This document shows positions 17,083-29,203 of a stretch of 64,000 bases of DNA, in pieces; position 1 is the stretch's first letter; every line of letters starts with the position of its first letter. The notes under the pieces were generated by a model. It was not told the DNA's origin. It was given only the letters and a program-made list of their open reading frames with translations, and did not search any database. Where the stretch lies: IMG/VR virus record IMGVR_UViG_3300050343_000191, positions 62,001-126,000 of that record; one strand, 5' to 3'. Position numbers and translations under genes: made by a program.

Positions 17083-17155
17083 TGGAGTTAAGCGGACTCG
17101 AACCGCTGACATCCTGCTTGCAAAGCAGGCGCTCTACCAACTGAGCTATAACCCC
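17083..17155 (-). tRNA. tRNA-Ala (anticodon TGC)
   Basis: GGGGTTATAGCTCAGTTGGTAGAGCG-CCTGC-TT-TGC-AA-GCAGG..GGTTCGAGTCC..CTCCA cloverleaf. Confidence 0.95.
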
Positions 17156-18770: not shown

Positions 18771-20148
18771 TAGAATTTAAATCCGTCGAATGATTTTTTA
18801 GGTTTCTTTTCGTCCTCATAATTATACTCCTCTTCCTGTCCAGAGTCAAGTATATCCTCTTGTGCTGACTGCTCACAATCATAAAGACGCATCTTGGCAC
18901 GGTCAATACCAACAACAAATCTCTTATTGACTAGATTAATATCATTATAACGTTCTTCAATTGCTTCACCATAATCTGTCCCAACTGTTCAAGTTCCTCA
19001 GTGCTAATAAGGGCAAACATAAGATCAGCAGTAGCAGGGAGACCAAAGGACTCAGAAGTGTCAGTAAGGTCAACATCAGAGCTACCATAACCAGAACGAG
19101 TGGTCTGGGTGGCAGATACGATAGGGACCTCGGCTTCGACAGCCAATCCTCTAAGTTCCTCTGCAATCGACTTAACAAGAGTATAGGAATTAATATTGGC
19201 AGATCCCGACTTGTAACGCGACGAGGCACAAATATTGAGGTAATCCATGAATATAATATCAGGTCTAAAAGATTTCTTAAGTGCAAGTTCATTAAGAAGT
19301 GCTTTAAAATGTCCACTATGAGCACTTGCAGTAGGATACTCTTTAATTATAAGTTGACCCTGAGTTTTTTTGTTCAACTTAACTTTGTTTTCAAACGAAG
19401 TTTAGGAAGATCACAATATCTCTGAATAGCAACATTCAATAAGGTTTGCATCAATTCGTTCAGCAATTTTTTCCTCTGCCATCTCCATTGTAATGTATAG
19501 TACGTTACTTCCTTGGAGACACGGAGCTAGCCATATGGCACATGAATAAAGACTTGCCGACACCTGTCCCAGCAAGAGCGATATTAAGAGTCTTATTAGA
19601 TATACCCCCTTTCGTAATCTTATTAAAATATTCAAGATCAAAGGGAATACCTTCTTCTTTCCTGATGATAGACTCATATCTTTCTTGATAATCTTCTAAG
19701 TAATTGTGTCCAATATGTTGTCAAAAGAAACTGCAAGTGCATCAGAAAGAATAGAAGGAATAGCATCGCGATTTTTCTTCTCATCAGCACCATCAGCAAT
19801 ACTGATAGATTCCATCAGTGCCAAATAAATGGCACGATCACGACACCACTTTTCAGTGGTATCTTAACCATTTATTATCGGCAGGAGAATCGTAAACGAA
19901 TTGCAATAATTTCACTGGTTTCTTTTACTTCAGTCTCAGAGAGATCTGTACGATTCCTCAATCTCAATTGAAGTGCTTCTGTAGTAATGGCATTGCCATA
20001 TTTCACAATAAACTGAGTAATCTCCTCAAAGATAATACCTTTTCGGTTCTCTGCTCAAAATAATCAGGTTCAATAAACGGAATTACTTTGCGAGAGTACT
20101 CTTCGTTGAAAACAAGTTTCGCAGAATAGTTGTCTCAATTCGCTCCAT
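18770..20148 (-). CDS. gp41: Replicative helicase (frameshifted)
   Basis: AGTGVGKS, YITMEMAEEKIAERIDAN, DYLNI, SESFGLP. Confidence 0.93.
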
Positions 20149-21144
20149 AAGAATAGGTTTCTTTTGCAATGGTGTCAAGTTTTTCCATCACCTCTGGGGT
20201 GAAGTAAACTTCAGGGTCTTTCAGGATTGCTTTGGCATAAACTTTCTTTCCATCTATTTCATATCGACCGGCAACATTTTTCCAAAGTCCACCAAGTTCA
20301 CCTAAGTTCAAGAAGACCATAATATCGATCAAGACCACGCTCATCGTAATAAAGACGCACCGTAACATTTTGATTCTCCTTACTTAAACGCGACTTAGCA
20401 GTCTTTGCCTTGATAAGATTTCCAATGACTTCTGTTCCATCCTTTTCTTTTTTCTTACTAAGTGAATAATCGTGGACGCAGCATACTTAAGACCAGAACC
20501 GCCACCCATCTCTTTAGTAGGAACATAAGCACCGATAACATCGTAAGTGTGATTAGTAACGATCATTGGAATGTTTGCTTGACCCAACTTGAGTGTGAGC
20601 ATTCTGAACGCACCTTTGATCAGTTGTGATTTAGTCATATCCCGAACTTGTTTTTCGTTTAGCGTATCAGTGATCTCTTTCTCAGTGGAAAGCATCCCCA
20701 AAGAGTCTAGCACAAACATACAGGGTTTGCGTTCTTCTTCAGATTTTTTTAAGTATATATCTACTGCCTTGAGTGCCTTACTGACGGAACTCTTCAACAG
20801 TTACTACATTAACCACGACCAGACGTGAGAGATCAATTCCTCTACTTTCGAGAAGAGATTTATTAACTGCTGCCTCGGTGTCAAAATAAAGGCAATATCC
20901 GTCAGGATTAGAATCAAGAAAGTTTTTGACGACAGCGAGAGAAAAGAAAGTCTTGCCAGTAGAAGACTCCCCAGCAATGGCAGTAATCTTATTCCCAGAT
21001 ACACCACCAAATATACTACCTGAAACCAATGCGTTAAAGATGTACGAACCCGTGTCCACGTAAGTTTTCAGTGTCGTCAATGTCGGATGCCAGTTTGGTA
21101 TAGTCATCTCCAATCTCTTTTACAATGTCGTTTAAAAAATCCAT
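20135..21144 (-). CDS. uvsX: RecA-like recombinase (frameshifted)
   Basis: [26 protein letters not shown]. Confidence 0.93.
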
Positions 21145-21148
21145 TACA

Positions 21149-21306
21149 TTACAAATCCAAATTCTTCACGGGCAATTTTTTTGTAAGGTCCGCCTGGGTT
21201 AGCATCACGGATATCCTTAATCTTCTTGAGTTTTTGATATAAACAGTATCTCCTCCAAGAGCACTTACAATAGTTGCAAGTTCTTTGTCGTTAATAGGTA
21301 GTCCAT
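21149..21306 (-). CDS. Small hypothetical protein (frameshifted)
   Basis: 'LPINDKELATIVSAL..GGDT' between gp43 and uvsX. Confidence 0.45.
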
Positions 21307-23810
21307 TTAACCGAAAAATAATTCCAAGTTTACAGTTTTTTCTACATTCCACCCAATTGCATCTAGGATTGACTTGAGAGGTTCGACAAAACTCTTTTCA
21401 AATTGTAGTCATAATCTATGTATTTGTCAAGGTCAAGTTCGCGTGGAAAGTCCTGGATGAATGAGATAACATTCTCATGAATAATATTGGGTTTCTTCAA
21501 ATACAGAATTTAATTTTTTCCCCATTATTGATAAGTGAATATTTATTCGTCAAGTTTCTTCTCCTTAATATAATGATTGAAGAGAAGAGCACCCCGACAA
21601 TGAATGGGAGTTCCCTTTGTGTAGATGCTGAGAGTAAGAACGGTATTTTATAACATCTGAGACTGAACTGGGGAAGGCAATTTCTTCAGGAGGAAGTTTC
21701 TTAAAATCAGTACGACACTTTATCAATGTACTTAATAACATCTTCTTCAGTGCCACTCATCATAAGTTTAAGACCATCCTTAATCATTGTGCTACAGGGT
21801 GCAGGTGTTGATGATTTGACTGCCTCAATACCCATCATCTTCAGTTTAGGTTCTTCATAACGAACACCTTCACTATCCCATACATTAAGAATGTATCGCT
21901 TCTTCGCAGTCCAGATACCACGTTCAGCAATATTCTCACGCTTCATCTGCATCTTCTGGTCATATGCCATTCACATACGTCCGCCAGTTCTTCGTAGCAA
22001 CGGTCAATATATGGTTCAACTTGTCTCTCACAGATCTTATCAAGTAACGTGACAATGCCTTGTTTTATCTCAGACTTATGACTAAGAAATTTATCAACAA
22101 GAGGTCCCATATTAAGATAGATTGAGTCAGTGTCAGATGCAATAACATAATCAACACTTTTGTTTTCAAGATCTTATTTAGATCTTTTGATTCATCTTAT
22201 TCTCAATCCAACGGATAGAGACTTGACCAGAAAGCGTAATTGCTTCCGCATTAGCCAGTTTATAATACGGAAATATTGATTACCAATAGCACCATAAGCA
22301 GAGTTGAGTTGAATCTTGCGCGCCATCTGAATGTTATTGCATCTGCAATCTCTTTCTCCAAGTGCCTTAGTTGGAGTTTTTTCATAATCTTGTTTTGCCT
22401 GCAAGCATCTTCTTTTTATAGATGGTTCGATCCTTATAGATCTTCTCCATCAGTTCTGGAAGAAACCCACGGACATCTTTACGATACATGGCACCATTAG
22501 CACACACTGCACTGTCCTTATAGTTCAAAGGTTAGTTCTTGATTAAGTATCTTATCAACTGTAACTGATGGGTGCCTGGTCTCTCAAGTGTCTCTGGAGA
22601 GATGTTGTACTGCATAATAAGATGAGGATAGAGAGAGTTAAGGTCAAAAGACACAACCCAATCATACTTTCCCGGAATCGGTTCCTTAACATATGCACCT
22701 GCATACTTAGCATCTTTGTCTGAACGTTCTTTGGGAGGAATTACAATGTTTCTCTTTTTGAGATAATTGTAAATGATCGCATCCCACATACGAACTTGAT
22801 AGAACACATCATTATAATTCACCTTAGCATCATATGCCATAACGATTGCAAGTTCAATCAGTTTCATCTTGTCTTCCATTCGGTCAACAAGTTCCACGTC
22901 AATGATGTTATATTCTACAAACTTCTGCCACCCATTAGTATAGAAATCTTTAAAGGTATCAAACTCAGAGTGATCAAGTTTCTTTTGCCCAAGTTCTACA
23001 CTCGCAATGTAATCCAGTCGATAAGACTCTTGTGCCTTATAAGTGAACTTCTTATATAGATTTAGGTAATCAAGTTGTGTAATACCACCAACATCATAAG
23101 AAATATGTTTACGACCCATAATAATAGTCTCACGTTCAGTCACCAAACCCCAAGGTGAAAGTCGTTTCATTAACTTCTCACCAAGATCCTATCGATACGA
23201 CGTCACCAAATATGGCATATCATACAGTTCACTATTCCATCCAGTAACAACTTCAGGAGTATTAGTCTTCAATCATCCACCAATTGATAAAGTCATTCAG
23301 AAGTTCATACTCTGTTCTAAACTTTTGTAGATAACATTCTCTTGCTTATTATTGAAAGGTCCTTGACCCCAAGTGCGAATCTGTTTGGTAGTGTAATCCT
23401 GCACCGTAATAAGAAGAACTTCTTCTGCAGCAGACTCTACATCAGGGAATCCATTTTCAGATTTTAACCTCAATATCAATCGTAGAATTTTGATCTTATG
23501 TAGTATCAAACTTAATCTCTTCCTCAGGATACATCTCAGAAATATACTGATAGATGTATCTGTCATTACCATAGATTTTAAAGTTTTCTACGCCATCATA
23601 CTTCTTGATAAACTCTCTACAATCACGAACAGTTCCAGGTTCTATTGATTCAACATAGTCTCCCTCAAGAGTTTTATATTTGGTTTTTCCTTTTGACTCA
23701 ACAAAAAGAGTCGGGTAAAACTTCTCTCGGGTCATGAAATGTTGACCATTTTCATAACCACGGACTAAGAAGTGATTCCCGACCATCTGAACGTTCGTGT
23801 AAAATCTCAT
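21307..23810 (-). CDS. gp43: Family B DNA polymerase (frameshifted)
   Basis: SFDLNSLYP, KIQLNSAYG, SDTDS, KKRY. Confidence 0.95.
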
Positions 23811-24166
23811 TCTGTAAGTTTCAAGTACGCTTCAACCTCCGTTTCGGATAATGGGACAGGATTAATTTTACTGTTATACATTTCTAGCACACTATCTAGA
23901 GGATCACAAATAGTTGCTACAATATCAGTAGTAATAACGAATTCCTTTGACTTAGAAAGAATCATCCAAGGTCGCAGAAATACGTCTAACTCATAATTAT
24001 TGTTCTGAGTTTCACTCTCAACCAAGAGAGTTTTTTCTTGAGATTCAATAACTTGAGGTTGGGTCAACATATAACCACGAACTTGCTCTTCCTGAACAAC
24101 TTCTTTAGTATCTGATATTAGGGTTTCTCCTGTTTTAAGGAGTACCATTTTAATTGTCATAATCAA
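23807..24166 (-). CDS. Conserved Sm-like small protein upstream of the polymerase
   Basis: 'IKMVLLKTGETLISD..PW..DP'. Confidence 0.75.
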   Translation of the reverse strand: MIMTIKMVLLKTGETLISDTKEVVQEEQVRGYMLTQPQVIESQEKTLLVESETQNNNYELDVFLRPWMILSKSKEFVITTDIVATICDPLDSVLEMYNSKINPVPLSETEVEAYLKLTE

Positions 24167-24182
24167 GTATTTTATCTTTTAC

Positions 24183-24261
24183 ATTCTACCAAGAAAAAAG
24201 AGGGGCGTCAACTGGATTGTGCCAGTTGCCCCTCTGCGGCGACGATATTCAATTTTATTTA
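24183..24261 (-). ncRNA. Composite element: late promoter, short hairpin/terminator RNA, embedded sigma70 promoter
   Basis: TAAATA(24256-61)..AGAGGGGCAACTGG-cacaat-CCAGTTGACGCCCCTCT-TTTTT; TTGACG-N17-TAGAAT. Confidence 0.6.
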
Positions 24262-25335
24262 GTAGAGAGGATTACTTTTACAAAGTTTAGATACTCTTAC
24301 CAAACATTCTTCTTTATTTCCATCTTGCTCATAATTTTTTAATCGACTTGCAATGATATCAGCAACTTCAACAAAGTCGTTTTCATCAAACCCTCTAGTA
24401 GTAAGAGCAGATGAACCCAATCTTAATCCACTGGTAACAAAGGGAGACTCAGGATCAAAAGGAACTGTATTTTTATTCGCAGTGATATTAATTTCACTTA
24501 CCAGTTGATCAGCAATCTTTCCAGTAATTCCCAGACTCCTCAAATCAAGTAGAACAATATGATTATCTGTTCCATCAGATACAATGTTAATACCATTTTC
24601 AATTAATCTCTTGGCAAGTGTTTTTGAATTAGAAACGACTTGCGAGCAATACTCTTTAAACTCTGGTTTAAGTGCCTCACCAAATGCAACTGCTTTTGCA
24701 GCAATCACATGTTCCAATGGACCACCCTGAGTTCCTGGAAATACTGCCTTGTCTAACCTCTTACCCATCTCCACATCATTAGACATAATCAACCCACCTC
24801 TTGGACCTCTCAGAGTCTTATGAGTTGTTGTGGTAACTACATCTGCATATGGAAGTGGTGATGGATGAACACCTGATGCAACCAATCCTGCAATGTGTGC
24901 GATGTCTGCTAATAGGTATGATCCAACTTCATCAGCAATATTTCTAAACTTACTGAAATCAATTGTTCTAGTGTATGCAGAGAACCCACAGATAATAAGT
25001 TGTGGTTTACATTCCCTTGCAAGTTCTAATATTCTATCATAGTCCAGTCTACCAGTCTCATCAACTTCATAGTGGCAAACATTGAACCACTTACCAGACA
25101 TATTAACTTTTGATCCGTGCGATAGATGACCACCATGTGATAGATCCAGAGATAGAACAGTATCTCCTGGTTTCAGAAGAGCAAGGAATACAGCAGCATT
25201 TGCTTGTGCTCCACTATGAGGTTGGACATTTGCCCACTCTGCATTGAATAGTTTTTTTACTCTTTCTCTTGCTAGATCCTCAATCTGGTCAACCCATTCA
25301 CATCCACCATAATATCTTTTACCAGGCAATCCTTC
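24259..25335 (-). CDS. glyA: Serine hydroxymethyltransferase, lacking about 50-55 N-terminal residues
   Basis: [31 protein letters not shown] (PLP lysine), NKNTVP, SGLRLG. Confidence 0.93.
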
Positions 25336-25385
25336 ACTGGATTTTACCAGTCGTCCTCTGTGGTGACGATATTCAGTTTTATTTA
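25336..25385 (-). repeat. Truncated second copy of the 24183-24261 element
   Basis: TAAATAAAAcTGAATATCGTCaCCaCAGAGGacgACTGGtaaAATCCAGT, then directly glyA codons. Confidence 0.8.
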
Positions 25386-25419
25386 TGGAGTAGTTAGATA
25401 TAGATTTGTGGGTGGACCA

Positions 25420-25503
25420 TTAGGGTAGTATGCTAGAGATGGGACCACCGATAAAAATAGTCATTGCAATTCCAACGGTGAGAGTGGCGGCTGTAAAGTT
25501 CAT
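25420..25503 (-). CDS. 27-aa hydrophobic peptide MNFTAATLTVGIAMTIFIGGPISSILP
   Basis: GAGGA RBS 5 nt upstream of the ATG; TATAAT at 25527-25532. Confidence 0.6.
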   Translation of the reverse strand: MNFTAATLTVGIAMTIFIGGPISSILP

Positions 25504-25542
25504 AAGTCGTCCTCTGTAAGTACATAATTATATAGAGTATAC

Positions 25543-25570
25543 TGTATCATAGTGATACACTTCTGTATCA
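25543..25570. promoter_or_regulatory. Operator-like triple half-site TGTATCA-N3-TGATACA-N4-TGTATCA
   Basis: Perfect 7-bp inverted repeats upstream of the peptide promoter. Confidence 0.5.
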
Positions 25571-25588
25571 ACATATGGCAAAAATATG

Positions 25589-26527
25589 TCATTGTTCAAC
25601 AACATTTCCAATAATCCAAGACCTCATACCGAATGGAGTATCTGCAATAAGACATTGAGTATGTTCCGCTACTTCTTTTGGCACTACCAAACAGAATCCA
25701 ATACCAAGATTGAATACATTACGCATCTCATCCTCAGTAATGTCTCCTGCCTTCTGGATCTTATTGAAGAGTTCTGGTCTCTCCCAAGCATCATAGTCAA
25801 CATCAACTCTAAGACCTGCTGGAAGGCATCGTGGAAGGTTCTCAGGCAGTCCTCCCCCAGTAATATGTGCCATACCAAGAATAGGAACTTCATCCAACAG
25901 GTACTGGATGAGACGGGCATAGATGGTGGTTGGTCTCAACAACTCAGGCATCTCTTTATACTTAATATAATTTCTCCACAACATATCATTGACGAGAGTA
26001 TATCCATTACTATGAAGACCACTACTCTCAATACCAATGACTACATCACCTGCTCTGATGTTACTGCCATCAACAATATCATTCTTCTCTACAATACCAG
26101 TACAGAAACCAGCAAGGTCATAATCATTTGCTCTGAAATGTTCTGCAGTTTCTCCACCAATAAGTTCCATCCCAGCCATTGTGCAACCAACATTAACTCC
26201 ATACACAATGTCACTTACATTGGCATCAAGTGTTTTAGTAGAGATATAATCTAAAAAATATAATGGTTTAGCACCAGAACATATAACATCATTGACGCAC
26301 ATAGCAACAAGATCCTGACCAATAGTGGTGTAATCATCAGCAATCCTACAGATATTCATTTTAGTTCCGACACCATCAGCACCAGATACTAATACAGGTT
26401 TCTCATATCCTGATGGAACTTCCATCATTCCACTGAACCCACCATCAATCTTAGGTGCCAGTACCTTAATATACTCCACAAAAGATCTACCTTTAATAAT
26501 GTCAACACCAGAAGTTTTGTAGTCCAT
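25589..26527 (-). CDS. purM: AIR synthetase (phosphoribosylformylglycinamidine cyclo-ligase)
   Basis: YKTSGVDI, DGVGTK, GGETAE, SSGLHSNGY, HITGGG, FNLGIG. Confidence 0.95.
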   Translation of the reverse strand: MDYKTSGVDIIKGRSFVEYIKVLAPKIDGGFSGMMEVPSGYEKPVLVSGADGVGTKMNICRIADDYTTIGQDLVAMCVNDVICSGAKPLYFLDYISTKTLDANVSDIVYGVNVGCTMAGMELIGGETAEHFRANDYDLAGFCTGIVEKNDIVDGSNIRAGDVVIGIESSGLHSNGYTLVNDMLWRNYIKYKEMPELLRPTTIYARLIQYLLDEVPILGMAHITGGGLPENLPRCLPAGLRVDVDYDAWERPELFNKIQKAGDITEDEMRNVFNLGIGFCLVVPKEVAEHTQCLIADTPFGMRSWIIGNVVEQ

Positions 26528-26796
26528 TAATGAATTTCTCCTTTCGCAATTTGTTCACGACGTTTTAGTTTCCATACTATGTAATCCATTGTTGGAATAC
26601 ACATAGGGTTCCAACCTACAAATGTTGTGGATTCCTTACTTGGGATCTTCCAACAGGGAGCATCATCATTATCAAGATCTAATGATTTACGATACTCATC
26701 CTCACCAAGTAAAACAACTGCTCTCTCAGCAGCATTCAAACTCTTGAAACAATCAAAGCAGTTCTTTCTAATCTCATCAGGGATTTGGTGTTTCAT
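26527..26796 (-). CDS. Hypothetical protein
   Basis: Clean 89-aa ORF. Confidence 0.65.
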   Translation of the reverse strand: MKHQIPDEIRKNCFDCFKSLNAAERAVVLLGEDEYRKSLDLDNDDAPCWKIPSKESTTFVGWNPMCIPTMDYIVWKLKRREQIAKGEIH

Positions 26797-26829
26797 GATT
26801 TATACTAATATTATACAAAGTTTACAATC

Positions 26830-27151
26830 CCATTTTCCAGTATCCCAAAGATATTCTTCAAAAATATTGTATGACAGCATTCCTGTTTCTTTTTTTATTT
26901 GTCAACATAAGATTTGCCTTCCTTCCATAATTTACATACCTCAAACTTTGGGCAGTTTTGGTCTTCCACCAACACCATTTTTTTGTCCTGCCTTACATAA
27001 AGCAACGAAATTTTCTTTATCTCTTGTTTTTTTAATGTTATGAATAAATATGTTCCCACCGAGTGATCATCTCTCCTTCAATTTTAGGAATGATATGATG
27101 ATGTTGTAAATTTTTATTTGTTCCACAAATTACACAAAATCTCAACTTCAT
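26830..27151 (-). pseudogene. Degenerate HNH endonuclease
   Basis: ATG overlapping the purC stop: MKLRFCVICGTNKNLQHHHIIPK.., then frameshifts; 'GGRPKL' downstream. Confidence 0.6.
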
Positions 27152-27848
27152 TGGACTGCAAGTGGTTGTAGTCGGTCAAGAATCTCACGATAGGCAGGAA
27201 CGATATCACCTTCATCTTTTCTGAATAGATCCTTATCAAATCTTTCATCACTACCAATCTTCCAGAGTCTCATACTATCAGGACTGATCTCATCGGCAAG
27301 ATACAAATCACCATGAGCATCATAACCATACTCAACCTTAAAATCTACAAGATCAATACCTAAGATGTAGAACATCTGACGAAGGTAATCATTGACCCGT
27401 AGTGTCATCTCAACAAAAGGTTCTGGATCATATCCCATCAAACGCACACGATCTGGTGTCAGAAGAGGATCGTGCTTGCTATCATCCTTCAGAAAGAACT
27501 CCACAATCGGTTGTGGTAGTGGAGCACCTTCTACCAAGAGTTGTCTCACGAACAATAGATCCAGCAGCACGATTACGACAGATAACTTCTAATGGAACGA
27601 TACCTACCTTCTTACATATCATCTTATTAGCACCAACCATATTAATATAATGAGTTGGGATATTTTCTTTGGAAAGTTTCTCAAAGATGATGGATGAGAT
27701 ACTACAACAGAGAGATCCTTTTCCTAAAGGATGATCTTCCTTCTCTCCGTTGCCTGCAGTCACTTTATCATGATACTCAATGATGACACTGCTGTGCATC
27801 ATCACCTTGATAAACAGTTTTAACCTTACCTTCGGTAATTACTTCCAT
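27148..27848 (-). CDS. purC: SAICAR synthetase (frameshifted)
   Basis: EGKVKTVY, PLEVICRN, DFKVEYG, LADEISPDSMRLW, DKD. Confidence 0.93.
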
Positions 27849-28045
27849 CAATCATCCTCCACTTTATATGTAATAGTAATTTGTTTGTATACTTCATCTC
27901 TATTGTCACTGTTGTATACATTACAACGTTCGATCTTAGCATCTAAGATTTTCACTACATTATCGAGTTGTAAATTAACTACAAAATCTGTAAATACAGG
28001 AGTGATTCCTATCTTATTAGATCCTGGTGCGTTAAAATCGGTCAT
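27848..28045 (-). CDS. Small hypothetical protein
   Basis: 65-aa ORF coupled to purS and purC. Confidence 0.6.
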   Translation of the reverse strand: MTDFNAPGSNKIGITPVFTDFVVNLQLDNVVKILDAKIERCNVYNSDNRDEVYKQITITYKVEDD

Positions 28046-28320
28046 GCTTCAATACCTTTGGGAAAGTTTTCAATCTCAGTCAATTCATAATCCCAATCTT
28101 CCATAACTGTGTTAGCAAGAAATCTATCAGAAAGCATTTCGAGTTCCTTCTCAGCATACTCTCTAGTTTCTGCCTCTAACCAAACATCAATCACCTTGCC
28201 AAGTCTAAGTTTCTTGATGTCTAACTCGGACAGTCTCTTACAGGCATCTCTCACAGCATTACCAGGAGAGTCATCCACCTGCGATCTCAAACGAACGAAT
28301 ACAAGTGCTTTAAACTTCAT
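28042..28320 (-). CDS. purS: FGAM synthase small subunit
   Basis: 'VFVRLRSQVDDSPG..LRLGK..LANTVMEDW'. Confidence 0.88.
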   Translation of the reverse strand: MKFKALVFVRLRSQVDDSPGNAVRDACKRLSELDIKKLRLGKVIDVWLEAETREYAEKELEMLSDRFLANTVMEDWDYELTEIENFPKGIEA

Positions 28321-28483
28321 TATTATAATATGCGATAGTTGCGTGAAACTTATCTATGGGATCAATAGTCTCTCCCAATGCACTTCTTATTCTTACTTTC
28401 ACTTCTTCATTACTAATCTCTTTCAAGATCTGTCGTAGTTCATCATCGTCAAACTTGACGTAATAATTATCACGATGCTTCAT
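28310..28483 (-). CDS. 57-aa hypothetical protein (below the ORF-track cutoff)
   Basis: MKHRDNYYVKFDDDELRQIL..; ATGA overlap with the upstream ORF. Confidence 0.55.
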   Translation of the reverse strand: MKHRDNYYVKFDDDELRQILKEISNEEVKVRIRSALGETIDPIDKFHATIAYYNNEV

Positions 28484-28644
28484 GCTTTCTCCCTTTCGTC
28501 AAGTGCTTCATTAATGATTTGCTTCAACTCGACACGTTCTTCTGGTGTAAATATTGTGCGATGCTTCACAGGCATAGGATCATAACTACTTGGTTTCTTT
28601 GATTTGCCAGGAAAACTCATACCCTGCGTATCGATTTTATCCAT
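28480..28644 (-). CDS. Small hypothetical protein
   Basis: MDKIDTQGMSFPG..ELKQIINEALDE. Confidence 0.6.
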   Translation of the reverse strand: MDKIDTQGMSFPGKSKKPSSYDPMPVKHRTIFTPEERVELKQIINEALDEREKA

Positions 28645-28670
28645 AAAAAAAGAGGGTCGTAATGACCCTC
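28645..28670 (-). terminator. Intrinsic terminator after hsp20
   Basis: GAGGGTC-attac-GACCCTC-T7. Confidence 0.75.
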
Positions 28671-28691
28671 CAATTGTAGCATATAAGTTGG

Positions 28692-29126
28692 TTAAAACCA
28701 AACTTTTTTCTGATGATGTTCAGGTACGATCCTACCAAGAACAATAGTTAGCAACCCATCCTCAAATTCAACTGATCTAACTTCCGTGTCCTCTGCCAAT
28801 GTCCAAGATCTGGTGAAAGATCGTTGAGCCATTCCTCTGTGGACATAAGTTTTTTCGGACTCGGTATCCTCCCTTTGTCCTTCGACAAAGAGTTTTCCGT
28901 CTTGTGTGTAGACATTTACTTCTTTCTTTTTAAATCCTGCAAGTGCAATTTCTAGTTTCGATTCTACTTCGCTGACCGTAACTAGATTAAATGGTGGATA
29001 ATTCTTCGTTGTTTCGTGGAGATTAAACAACCTATCGAAGTATTCATCCATTCCAATGCTATTCCTATTTATGCGTTCCATCAACGCAGGCAGGTCCGCA
29101 GCAGTATACCGTGCAAGGTTTCCCAT
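28692..29126 (-). CDS. hsp20: Small heat-shock protein
   Basis: NYPPFNL, LAGF, HRGMAQRSFTRSW, DGLL. Confidence 0.95.
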   Translation of the reverse strand: MGNLARYTAADLPALMERINRNSIGMDEYFDRLFNLHETTKNYPPFNLVTVSEVESKLEIALAGFKKKEVNVYTQDGKLFVEGQREDTESEKTYVHRGMAQRSFTRSWTLAEDTEVRSVEFEDGLLTIVLGRIVPEHHQKKVWF

Positions 29127-29203
29127 GATTGTAGCTCCTTTAAAAGCGAGTTTGTGTTTTGTGGACCCCGAAGGCATCCATAAGTATATTTAACACAAGA
29201 CAT

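What the first reader, a model, noticed from the sequence alone, without database searches (positions are those of the whole stretch)
24183..24261. Compact switch upstream of the polymerase unit: late promoter, ~60-nt hairpin RNA, and a sigma70 promoter built into the terminator
Seen: TAAATA (overlapping the glyA stop), a leader ATATCGTCGCCGC, a long stem AGAGGGGCAACTGG/CCAGTTGACGCCCCTCT and a U-tract. The 3' arm contains TTGACG exactly 17 nt before TAGAAT, facing the 23807 ORF and gp43. No ORF lies between the late promoter and the terminator. Inference: a late sRNA, and/or late transcription that occludes the early promoter and shuts off replication genes.
Basis: partly seen in the sequence, partly recalled or inferred. 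Interest (0 to 1): 0.6.

Follow-up and report, generated by a model that had tools for sequence, protein, structure and literature searches.

The report
Conserved cyanophage late-promoter/terminator/early-promoter cassette
The 80-base gap in front of the DNA-polymerase genes of this marine cyanophage holds a small non-coding cassette (late promoter box, 15-base leader, terminator hairpin, early promoter inside the hairpin) whose core is kept almost letter for letter in many, but not all, cyanobacterial T4-like phages, is absent from the RNA family library, and marks the borders of a swappable metabolic gene.

Summary
On the minus strand lie CTAAATA (its TAA is the SHMT stop), the leader GAATATCGTCGCCGC, a 14-pair bulged hairpin, six T, and TTGACG-17 nt-TGgTAGAAT facing the DUF6561 ORF and gp43.

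It is not a local curiosity. The block matches 293 cyanophage records. I read 183 distinct copies from phage and IMG/VR contigs, usually one per genome. The lower stem covaries. The late box is kept in 96% and the sigma-70 promoter in about 84%.

Syn9, S-PM2 and the copy in front of intact phage SHMT genes keep box, leader, hairpin and T-run but have no sigma-70 promoter. The conserved core is therefore the late box, leader and hairpin, not the early promoter.

It precedes unrelated genes: DUF6561, a tail-lysozyme-like gene, DUF6445, DUF2997 and SHMT. In SHMT-carrying relatives two copies flank the gene, and the junctions lie inside the element. This resembles the PeSL cassettes of T4-type coliphages.

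No Rfam family and no paper I could search describes it. No run gave transcript starts or ends, so the late short RNA stays inferred. The promoter-occlusion idea is untested and cannot be the conserved role.

Verdict: a real composite regulatory cassette, a new variant of a known kind, and possibly a new phage RNA family.

The parts
24256..24262 (-). Late-promoter-type box CTAAATA; its TAA (24261-24259) is the SHMT stop codon
   Evidence: Sequence. TAAAT is kept in 120 of 125 leader-and-apex-anchored elements whatever the upstream gene. In the phage's own genome TAAATA lies at -70..-5 of 61 of 352 ORFs, 6.7 times expectation, and the base before it is A in 41 and C in 16. NATAAATA is the published cyanomyovirus late motif (PMC2984593).
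24236..24250 (-). Conserved leader GAATATCGTCGCCGC, the most conserved block and the predicted 5' end of a late RNA
   Evidence: TAT..T.G are invariant and CG.C..CGC at least 90% conserved in 59 diverse sequences. It is kept in Syn9 and S-PM2. It does not follow the other late boxes of this genome. A leader-only scan finds elements whose hairpin apex differs.
24199..24235 (-). Hairpin P2: 5' arm 24235-24222, loop CACAAT 24221-24216, 3' arm 24215-24199 with a GAC bulge
   Evidence: MFE -22 kcal/mol from leader to T-run. Of 11 consensus pairs, 5 show compensatory changes. Covariation exceeds 500 of 500 shuffles and all slid controls. G-U pairs (18) outnumber A-C (5), which points to the sense-strand RNA.
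24194..24199 (-). T-run (6 T, then CTT): U-tract of the intrinsic terminator and also part of the early promoter's spacer
   Evidence: Sequence. A T-run is present in 122 of 125 elements.
24183..24211 (-). Sigma-70-type early promoter: -35 TTGACG 24211-24206, 17-nt spacer, TG 24191-24190, -10 TAGAAT 24188-24183; predicted start near 24176
   Evidence: Scan match of 10 in 12 with TG. Of 125 elements, TTGAC is in 106, a -10 at 16-18 nt in 105 and TGn in 100. It is absent in Syn9, S-PM2 and the SHMT-upstream copies.
23807..24160 (-). Downstream gene: DUF6561 protein (T4-like gene cluster 176, phrog_431), first gene of the polymerase unit
   Evidence: Pfam DUF6561 2e-9; phrog_431 8e-24. The same family lies downstream in 102 of 124 elements.
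21316..23810 (-). gp43 DNA polymerase; its ATG at 23810 overlaps the DUF6561 stop; in this assembly it is spread over three frames
   Evidence: tblastn of the S-SKS1 polymerase covers residues 1-816 in frames -1, -2 and -3. Megablast to the S-SKS1 polymerase. 1-nt indels against environmental contigs (table 4).
25336..25386 (-). Second, truncated copy of the element (late box 25385-25380, leader 25374-25360, 5' arm, loop, CCAGT), cut at 25336|25335
   Evidence: blastn of the own genome, 84% over 51 nt; model R1 35.5 bits. Relatives carry the complete promoter-less copy plus SD, ATG and about 45 more SHMT codons at this point. One environmental contig has 180 extra letters exactly at 25335|25336.
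24259..25335 (-). SHMT gene body bracketed by the two copies; 5'-truncated in this assembly, with no ATG/GTG start and the Pfam match beginning at profile position 53
   Evidence: Pfam; upstream frame read-through; intact 409-aa relatives at 93-98% identity.

Best explanation
This is a portable, sequence-conserved regulatory cassette of cyanobacterial T4-like phages. It sits at the 5' border of the DUF6561-gp43 (DNA polymerase) unit.

Reading 5' to 3' on the gene strand it has three jobs.

1. Late promoter unit. A gp55-type late box (C/A)TAAATA would start an RNA about 7 nt downstream. That RNA begins with the invariant leader AAUAUCGUCGNCGC and runs into the hairpin.

2. Terminator. The G+C-rich hairpin plus U-tract is an intrinsic terminator. 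It ends transcription from upstream genes (here SHMT and the pur genes; in most relatives hsp20). It also ends most late-box transcripts, which gives an RNA of about 57 nt. A fraction reads through.

3. Early promoter. An extended -10 sigma-70 promoter is built into the terminator: its -35 is in the 3' arm and the U-tract lies in its spacer. It starts hairpin-free mRNA for DUF6561, gp43 and uvsX early in infection.

Together this gives the polymerase unit an insulated early promoter and a late promoter. That pairing is the arrangement proposed for cyanophage homologues of T4 middle genes.

Because its core is nearly identical in many phages, the cassette also serves as a site of homologous exchange. 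A gene such as SHMT can be inserted or lost between two copies.

Shown here: the sequence anatomy, conservation, covariation, copy number, contexts and recombination junctions.

Inferred: that each promoter fires, when it fires, how efficient the terminator is, and why the 15-nt leader is invariant.
For: Anatomy.

Conservation:
- 293 phage records match.
- The scans gave 124, 125 and 183 unique elements.
- The late box is in 96%, TTGAC in 85%, a -10 at 16-18 nt in 84%, TGn in 80% and a T-run in 98%.

Structure:
- Compensatory changes in the lower stem.
- 0 of 500 shuffles reach the observed covariation.

Copy number:
- One strong copy per genome in S-SM2, S-RIM8, Syn9, S-PM2, S-SRM01, S-IOM18, S-SCSM1, P-SSM7 and S-SKS1.

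Position:
- The downstream gene is DUF6561, followed by gp43, in 102 of 124 elements. hsp20 lies upstream in 64 of 123.
- At the S-PM2 hsp20/GC176 junction the same layout (late box, short hairpin, T-run, TGnTATACT) is built from unrelated sequence. The layout itself is therefore selected there.

Late box:
- It is enriched 6.7-fold upstream of ORFs in this genome, and the C variant is common.
- The literature says cyanomyovirus homologues of T4 middle genes carry both early and late promoters, and gives the late motif as NATAAATA (PMC2984593).

Exchange:
- Intact SHMT is flanked by two copies.
- Its left contexts differ: hsp20, a small membrane ORF, or purM plus a 27-aa ORF. The right-hand hairpins are of the local type.
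- Environmental contigs join 24261/24263 to 25521/25605, and 24234 to 25365. These are relatives with a single element and no SHMT.
Against: - No transcript start, end or timing was seen. Only assembled contigs of metatranscriptomes were available, and the element's depth there is inflated by matches from many phages.
- A promoter and terminator junction does not explain why the 15-nt leader and, in most copies, the GGCAMAAUCC apex are invariant while the stem beneath them drifts.
- In about 11% of copies the T-run is followed at once by SD and ATG with no sigma-70 promoter: SHMT, Syn9 gp213, L072, L215 and L222. There the hairpin cannot be a tight terminator, or those genes would be silent.
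- Duplication was seen only around SHMT. None of the 120 loci of the first scan held two copies. The exchange role is therefore documented for one cassette only.
- The element is absent, at noise level and equal to the T4 control, from P-SSM2, P-SSM4, P-HM2 and S-CRM01. It is not indispensable.
Confidence: 0.6

Rival explanations
1. The late box, leader and hairpin form a gene for a small RNA of about 55-80 nt made late in infection. Its conserved single-stranded 5' end (AAUAUCGUCGNCGC) acts in trans on a host or phage RNA or protein. The promoter in the hairpin is a secondary addition.
For: - It has the classical sRNA layout: own promoter box, no ORF, conserved unpaired 5' block, covarying terminator hairpin.
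- The core persists without a sigma-70 promoter in Syn9, and in S-PM2 it faces a convergent gene with nothing to regulate in cis.
- Its position in the genome moves while its sequence stays: next to gp43 in some genomes, next to hli and psbA in others.
- The leader is not a general feature of late promoters.
- G-U pairs outnumber A-C pairs, which fits a sense-strand RNA.
Against: - No expression data.
- A duplex scan of the phage's own genome found only the antisense of the two copies and generic GGC-repeat matches. Host genomes were not scanned.
- 174 of 183 copies lie directly in front of a gene, and truly stand-alone copies are rare.
- It is absent from several Prochlorococcus phages.
Confidence: 0.25
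2. It is a cis-acting 5' leader, an attenuator. Late transcripts start at the box, and the leader, perhaps with a bound protein or by modifying RNA polymerase as put-type RNAs do, decides whether the polymerase stops at the hairpin or reads on into the next gene.
For: - In 20 of 183 copies the gene (SHMT, Syn9 gp213/DUF6445 and others) starts 0-25 nt after the T-run and has no promoter of its own. Read-through of this hairpin is then the only nearby route to expression.
- About half of the copies carry a second small hairpin (P1) between leader and P2. Its sequence varies but its pairing with the leader is kept.
Against: - No alternative pairing between the invariant leader and the variable stem is possible. 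The stem covaries without the leader changing.
- No ligand or protein partner is known.
- The S-PM2 copy has no downstream gene on its strand.
- No Rfam cis-regulatory family matches.
Confidence: 0.2
3. Late transcription from TAAATA runs across the -35 and stops in the spacer of the early promoter. It thereby occludes the early promoter and turns off the polymerase genes late in infection.
For: The geometry allows it. The late unit overlaps the whole -35 and spacer of the early promoter, and this overlap is kept in about 84% of copies.
Against: - The conserved core exists without any early promoter (Syn9, S-PM2, SHMT-upstream copies).
- It also stands in front of non-replication genes.
- The published view is that the late promoter adds expression rather than removing it (PMC2984593).
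- No data on timing.
Confidence: 0.1
4. The conservation is at the DNA level. The block is a recombination or recognition site, such as a target of a homing-type nuclease, a site-specific exchange site or a replication origin. Its promoter and terminator features are incidental.
For: It is single-copy and nearly identical between otherwise diverged genomes. Gene cassettes join inside it.
Against: - Conservation is position-specific and comes with compensatory, G-U-tolerant stem changes. That fits RNA better than a duplex DNA site.
- The T-run and the promoter spacing are themselves conserved.
- Cumulative GC skew shows no inflection at the element.
- No nuclease or integrase gene is consistently adjacent.
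Confidence: 0.1

Closest known systems
PeSL (promoter-early stem-loop) cassettes of T4-type phages (Arbiol et al. 2010, PMC2839356; Comeau et al. 2014, PMC4122927)
   Same: It is a composite of a stem-loop or terminator and a sigma-70-like early promoter with an N17 spacer, followed by SD and start codon. It sits at borders of variable genes. Flanking copies bracket an inserted gene (here SHMT), and junctions lie inside the motif, as in the PeSL mini-circle model.
   Different: - PeSLs are many per genome and cluster in hyperplastic regions. This sequence family occurs once per genome, or twice with SHMT.
- In PeSLs the stem-loop lies just upstream of the promoter. Here the -35 is inside the 3' arm and the U-tract is the spacer.
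- This cassette adds a late box and an invariant 15-nt leader that PeSLs lack.
- It is conserved across genera, not only between close pairs.
- Those papers did not treat cyanophages, and one paper found no dense PeSLs in S-PM2 (PMC4503421).
Tandem early plus late promoters in front of T4 middle-gene homologues in RB49 and cyanomyoviruses (reviewed in PMC2984593)
   Same: A sigma-70 early promoter and an NATAAATA-type late box both stand upstream of a replication gene unit, in phages that lack MotA and AsiA.
   Different: The published model has no terminator between the two promoters and no conserved leader. Here the late start is separated from the gene by a strong hairpin and U-tract.
Phage-encoded small RNAs and structured RNAs known in cyanophages (CfrI, PhotoRC-II, wcaG, manA, glnA, abiF; PMC9964418, PMC12197685)
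   Same: It is a short, conserved, non-coding element of cyanomyoviruses with a covarying structure. In the psbA-context genomes it lies within about 1.5 kb of PhotoRC-II and wcaG RNA.
   Different: No sequence or structure match to any Rfam 15 family. It has a late-promoter box and is fused to a promoter and terminator. No expression has been shown.
Intrinsic (Rho-independent) terminators that overlap the next promoter
   Same: A G+C-rich hairpin and U-tract sit directly before a -10 box. Other examples occur in this genome, for instance after hsp20 at 28651-28671 with TTACGA-17-TAAAAT, and at genome positions 207274, 102152 and 97975.
   Different: Ordinary terminators drift freely in sequence. 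This one keeps a leader and apex across genera.

Membership tests
PeSL cassette (T4-type phages) | Stem-loop directly coupled to a sigma-70-like early promoter (-35, N17, -10) | tested here: met
   TTGACG-17-TAGAAT with the -35 in the 3' arm; kept in about 84% of copies.
PeSL cassette (T4-type phages) | Shine-Dalgarno and start codon of the next gene at the 3' end | tested here: inconclusive
   Most relatives have GGAG or GAGG 8-12 nt after the -10, then ATG. The window itself has only an A-rich stretch before ATG 24160.
PeSL cassette (T4-type phages) | Many similar copies per genome, clustered in hyperplastic regions | tested here: not met
   One strong model hit per genome in nine isolates, and two in SHMT carriers. 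Generic terminator plus -10 composites of other sequence do occur.
PeSL cassette (T4-type phages) | Found at insertion, deletion or replacement borders between related phages, with junctions in the motif | tested here: met
   The SHMT cassette is flanked by two copies, with varied left contexts and local-type right hairpins. SHMT-less joints appear in environmental contigs. The gene upstream of the element is variable.
PeSL cassette (T4-type phages) | Excision as mini-circles by recombination between tandem copies | not testable with these tools
   Needs PCR on infected cells.
T4-type late promoter (gp55/gp33/gp45-dependent) | TATAAATA-like box (cyanophages: NATAAATA) about 7 nt before the start | tested here: inconclusive
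   The box is CTAAATA, with C where the consensus has A. In this genome 16 of 66 ORF-proximal boxes have C, and the motif is enriched 6.7-fold upstream of ORFs. It is kept in 96% of copies. No start site was mapped.
Intrinsic terminator | G+C-rich hairpin followed by a U-tract, with structure maintained in evolution | tested here: met
   -22 kcal/mol and six U; covariation 0 of 500 shuffles; T-run in 122 of 125. Efficiency was not measured.
Trans-acting small RNA | Own promoter and terminator, no ORF, conserved unpaired region | tested here: met
Trans-acting small RNA | A discrete transcript and a target | not testable with these tools
   Only contigs of public runs were available. The self-genome duplex scan gave nothing specific.
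Any Rfam 15 family | Score at or above the family's gathering threshold | tested here: not met
   The window has only a tRNA at 17083-17155. The best sub-threshold hits reach 19 bits against cut-offs of 39-285. Relatives' loci give only tRNA, PhotoRC-II and wcaG at other places.

The most novel reading that the evidence does not exclude
The late box, invariant leader and hairpin are the gene of an undescribed RNA family of marine cyanomyoviruses. It would be made by the phage's late transcription machinery and would have a function of its own. That function could be trans-regulation of a host or phage target through the AAUAUCGUCGNCGC 5' end, or a put-like action on RNA polymerase that lets late transcription pass terminators. 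The same conserved block doubles as the landing pad through which metabolic genes such as SHMT move between phages.
Probability: 0.3. Interest if true: 0.8.

Novelty: new variant of a known kind. Interest (0 to 1): 0.6.

Why it matters
Cyanomyoviruses kill a large share of marine Synechococcus, yet they lack the T4 middle-mode regulators MotA and AsiA. How they time replication genes is therefore still open.

This cassette is a concrete, widely conserved and easily mutated element at the head of the polymerase unit. It would let that question be tested.

If the short late RNA exists, it would be one of very few phage small RNAs conserved across genera.

The two copies around SHMT give direct, population-level evidence for how auxiliary metabolic genes are slotted into cyanophage genomes. 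They extend the PeSL idea from coliphages and vibriophages to ocean phages.

The covariance model built here could be used to annotate the element in viromes.

Tried and rejected
- Rfam at gathering and at E up to 10 gave nothing relevant.
- Small-ORF reading. The 14-codon TTG frame through the leader and hairpin is broken by 4-5-nt insertions in relatives, and a 41-aa plus-strand ORF runs into antisense SHMT. Both were rejected.
- Pseudoknot between the AAUUG upstream of the leader and the loop. The upstream letters vary while the loop is constant, but my tabulation pattern left out the CACAAT-loop copies, so this check is incomplete. The idea was not pursued.
- Antiterminator pairing of the leader with the stem. 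None is possible, because the stem varies and the leader does not.
- Target search by duplex energy in the phage genome returned only self-antisense and GGC-repeat noise.
- Replication-origin idea. Cumulative GC skew is monotonic through the element.
- Expression evidence. The one run search and the one read-laying run returned only Logan contigs of marine metatranscriptomes, which carry no strand, ends or levels. The higher depth over 24171-24337 comes from many phages matching a conserved block and is no evidence of a small RNA.
- The Syn9 start-site paper (Doron et al. 2016, PMC5029184) is not held, so I could not check whether its data already show this RNA.
- A text search for four 12-14-mers of the element found only unrelated papers.
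- 'Core of all cyanomyoviruses' was rejected. P-SSM2, P-SSM4, P-HM2 and S-CRM01 score no better than T4.
- Double copies outside SHMT loci: none among 120 loci.

Full report
**What is there**

The window is part of a 231-kb IMG/VR cyanomyovirus record. Its closest isolate by DNA in this region is Synechococcus phage S-SKS1. Genes around the finding are on the minus strand.

Read on that strand, the intergenic stretch 24262-24161 contains the following:
- CTAAATA at 24262-24256. Its TAA ends the upstream SHMT ORF (Pfam SHMT 2e-147).
- Five bases, then GAATATCGTCGCCGC at 24250-24236.
- A hairpin: 5' arm 24235-24222, loop CACAAT, 3' arm 24215-24199 with a bulged GAC.
- Six T.
- TTGACG at 24211-24206, exactly 17 nt before TAGAAT at 24188-24183. 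TGg precedes the TAGAAT.
- 22 nt further on, ATG 24160 of a DUF6561 protein.

The stop of the DUF6561 gene overlaps the ATG of gp43 at 23810.

The fold is better than all 200 shuffles (z = -3.7). A lone sigma-70-like match would not be remarkable here, since 77 were found against 65 expected in 20 kb.

**It is a conserved module**

Megablast of 2 kb around the site matched other Kyanoviridae only over these 80 bases, at 89-94% identity, while the flanking genes did not match. A sensitive blastn found the block in 293 phage records.

I ran three scans of IMG/VR:
- anchored on the apex plus GAC;
- anchored on the leader plus apex;
- anchored on the leader alone.

Each scan stopped at its 120-locus limit, so more copies exist. 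Pooled with the phage loci, they gave 183 distinct elements.

The common plan is as follows:
- (C/A)TAAATA;
- 3-10 nt, rarely about 20;
- (T)GAATATCGTCGNCGC;
- an optional 4-25-nt insert that forms a small hairpin with the leader;
- a G+C-rich stem whose sequence drifts with compensation;
- an apex, mostly ACUGG-CAMAAU-CCAGU;
- a T-run;
- TGnTAnAAT.

In the set anchored on leader and apex, which does not presuppose a promoter, the counts out of 125 are:

| Feature | Copies |
|---|---|
| TAAAT | 120 |
| TTGAC | 106 |
| -10 at 16-18 nt | 105 |
| TGn | 100 |
| T-run | 122 |

RNAalifold finds 11 pairs, 5 of them with compensatory changes. With the named structure, 97.2% of cells pair. 48 cells changed on both sides against 12.7 +/- 6.4 in shuffles (0 of 500), and all slid registers score far lower. 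G-U pairs (18) outnumber A-C pairs (5), as expected for an RNA of the gene strand.

A covariance model (R1) finds one strong copy per complete genome in S-SM2, S-RIM8, Syn9, S-PM2, S-SRM01, S-IOM18, S-SCSM1, P-SSM7 and S-SKS1. It finds nothing above the noise seen in T4 in P-SSM2, P-SSM4, P-HM2 and freshwater S-CRM01. The element is therefore widespread but not universal.

**What is core and what is added**

In Syn9 the element lies between gp212 and gp213 near psbA. In S-PM2 it follows an hli gene and faces a convergent virion gene.

Both keep box, leader, hairpin and T-run, but neither has a -35 or a -10. In Syn9 the T-run runs straight into the ATG of gp213.

At the S-PM2 hsp20/GC176 junction, where most phages have the element, the same layout is built from unrelated sequence: late box, short hairpin, T-run, TGnTATACT.

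Two layers follow from this:
- a selected layout at the head of the polymerase unit;
- a specific leader-hairpin module that can sit elsewhere.

The leader-only scan shows that the leader is the most constant block. In more distant copies the apex keeps GGCAAAAUCC on compensated stems (UUGG/CCAA, AUGG/CCAU) or is replaced altogether.

Other late boxes in this genome are not followed by anything like the leader.

The genes downstream of the element are unrelated to each other: DUF6561/phrog_431, tail-lysozyme-like gp214/phrog_512, DUF6445, DUF2997 and SHMT.

**The second copy and the SHMT cassette**

The phage's own genome holds a partial copy at window 25336-25386, directly 5' of SHMT.

The window's SHMT lacks its first 50 or so residues and any ATG/GTG start. 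No isolate cyanophage in the phage collection has an SHMT. IMG/VR, however, holds 47 loci with the same gene at up to 98% identity.

In those loci the intact 409-aa gene has this arrangement:
- Upstream is a complete but promoter-less copy: box, leader, hairpin AGAGGAC...GUCCUCU, T-run, then GGAGAUUAUUAUG.
- Downstream is the promoter-bearing copy and DUF6561.

The left neighbour differs between loci: hsp20, a small membrane ORF, or purM plus a 27-aa ORF as in the window. One locus has no left copy.

In some loci the left hairpin is of the local type up to the T-run (L150). In others it joins a local 5' arm to the cassette's 3' arm (L157-159). The right-hand hairpins are of many local types although the SHMT 3' end is constant.

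Contigs of marine metatranscriptomes laid on the window show three things:
- relatives that join 24261/24263 to 25521/25605, and 24234 to 25365, which means a single element and no SHMT;
- one relative with 180 extra letters exactly at 25335|25336;
- many 1-nt indels in gp43.

So the window's SHMT carries a 180-nt deletion that removed the 3' half of the left copy, the SD, the ATG and about 45 codons. I cannot tell whether that deletion is biological or an assembly fault. gp43, uvsX and purC nearby are also frame-broken.

The pattern matches what the PeSL papers describe for T4-type coliphages and vibriophages (PMC2839356, PMC4122927): a gene bracketed by two copies of a promoter/terminator motif, with junctions inside the motif and present/absent variants in the population. 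Double copies were found only around SHMT.

**How it most likely works**

The best-supported reading is a composite regulatory cassette:
- an intrinsic terminator that closes the upstream unit;
- an extended -10 sigma-70 promoter built into that terminator, which starts the DUF6561-gp43 mRNA early;
- a gp55-type late box upstream, whose transcripts mostly end at the hairpin (about 57 nt here) and partly read through.

TAAATA is enriched 6.7-fold just upstream of ORFs in this genome, and C before it is the second commonest variant. Cyanomyovirus homologues of T4 middle genes are reported to carry both early and late promoters (PMC2984593).

This does not explain the invariant leader. The leader is the main reason to keep open a small RNA with its own function, or a cis-acting attenuator. 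The attenuator reading is favoured by the 11% of copies in which a gene with no promoter of its own starts right after the T-run.

It cannot be the conserved role, because the core survives without the early promoter and in front of non-replication genes.

**Known or new**

- No Rfam 15 family matches.
- The cyanophage non-coding RNAs listed in recent papers (CfrI, PhotoRC-II, wcaG, manA, glnA, abiF) are other elements.
- The PeSL papers do not treat cyanophages.
- A paper on S-PM2 found no dense PeSLs there.
- A text search for the element's own words found nothing relevant.
- I could not read the Syn9 start-site study, which may already contain the transcript.

I therefore rate it a new variant of a known kind: a PeSL-like promoter/terminator cassette with an added late unit. 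There is roughly a 0.3 chance that it is also a new phage RNA family.

**Limits**

- All promoter, terminator and RNA assignments are from sequence and comparison.
- The apex conservation in the first two scans is partly due to the search patterns.
- Metagenomic loci are fragments.

Noticed in passing
window 24259-25386 (-): The SHMT (glyA-like) gene is 5'-truncated in this assembly. Relatives have 180 more bases at 25335|25336: the 3' half of an element copy, the SD, the ATG and about 45 codons. SHMT was not found in any isolate cyanophage record but is in 47 IMG/VR loci.
   Followed up: yes
window 20138-23810 (-) and 27148-27805 (-): gp43 DNA polymerase and uvsX are spread over all three frames, and purC is in two pieces. 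Environmental contigs differ by many 1-nt indels here. This suggests local assembly errors rather than pseudogenes.
   Followed up: partly
window 24259-28701 (-): A 4.4-kb island of metabolic genes lies between hsp20 (28692-29177) and the polymerase unit, where most relatives have hsp20 directly next to the element. It holds purS (28042-28320), purC, an 89-aa ORF, purM (25589-26527), a 27-aa hydrophobic ORF (about 25419-25502) and SHMT. These are purine synthesis genes plus a one-carbon supply.
   Followed up: partly
window 28623-28671 (-): A second terminator-promoter composite of unrelated sequence lies right after hsp20: GGAGGGUC-loop-GACCCUC, seven T, with TTACGA-17-TAAAAT overlapping the loop and 3' arm. 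Similar terminator plus -10 pairs occur at genome positions 97975, 102152 and 207274.
   Followed up: partly
L072, L215, L222, L230, L274, L295 (IMG/VR loci): In these variant elements the conserved small hairpin (..UGGCAAAAUCCA..) stands alone after the leader. It is followed by a -10-like or second late box and then a separate G+C-rich terminator. The apex hairpin and the terminator are therefore separable.
   Followed up: partly
L002 1285-1379 and 3933-4027; L009 2668-2758; L010 38-143 and 3181-3272: In genomes where the element sits in the hli/psbA region, the Rfam motifs PhotoRC-II (before psbA) and wcaG RNA lie within about 0.6-1.9 kb of it. This makes a cluster of structured non-coding elements.
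   Followed up: no
window 17083-17155 (-): A tRNA gene (74.6 bits) is the only Rfam family at gathering score in the window.
   Followed up: no
window 23807-23810 (-): The DUF6561 stop and the gp43 start overlap (ATGA). The small ORF T4-GC177, which separates them in S-SM2, S-PM2 and S-SCSM1, is absent here.
   Followed up: no
L163 (IMG/VR), about 110 nt upstream of its SHMT start: An A+T-rich look-alike of the element stands in front of a more distant SHMT (87% identity). It has a late box, AGAUAUAGUUAUAC in place of the leader, a hairpin with an ACUGG/CCAGU stem and a T-run.
   Followed up: no
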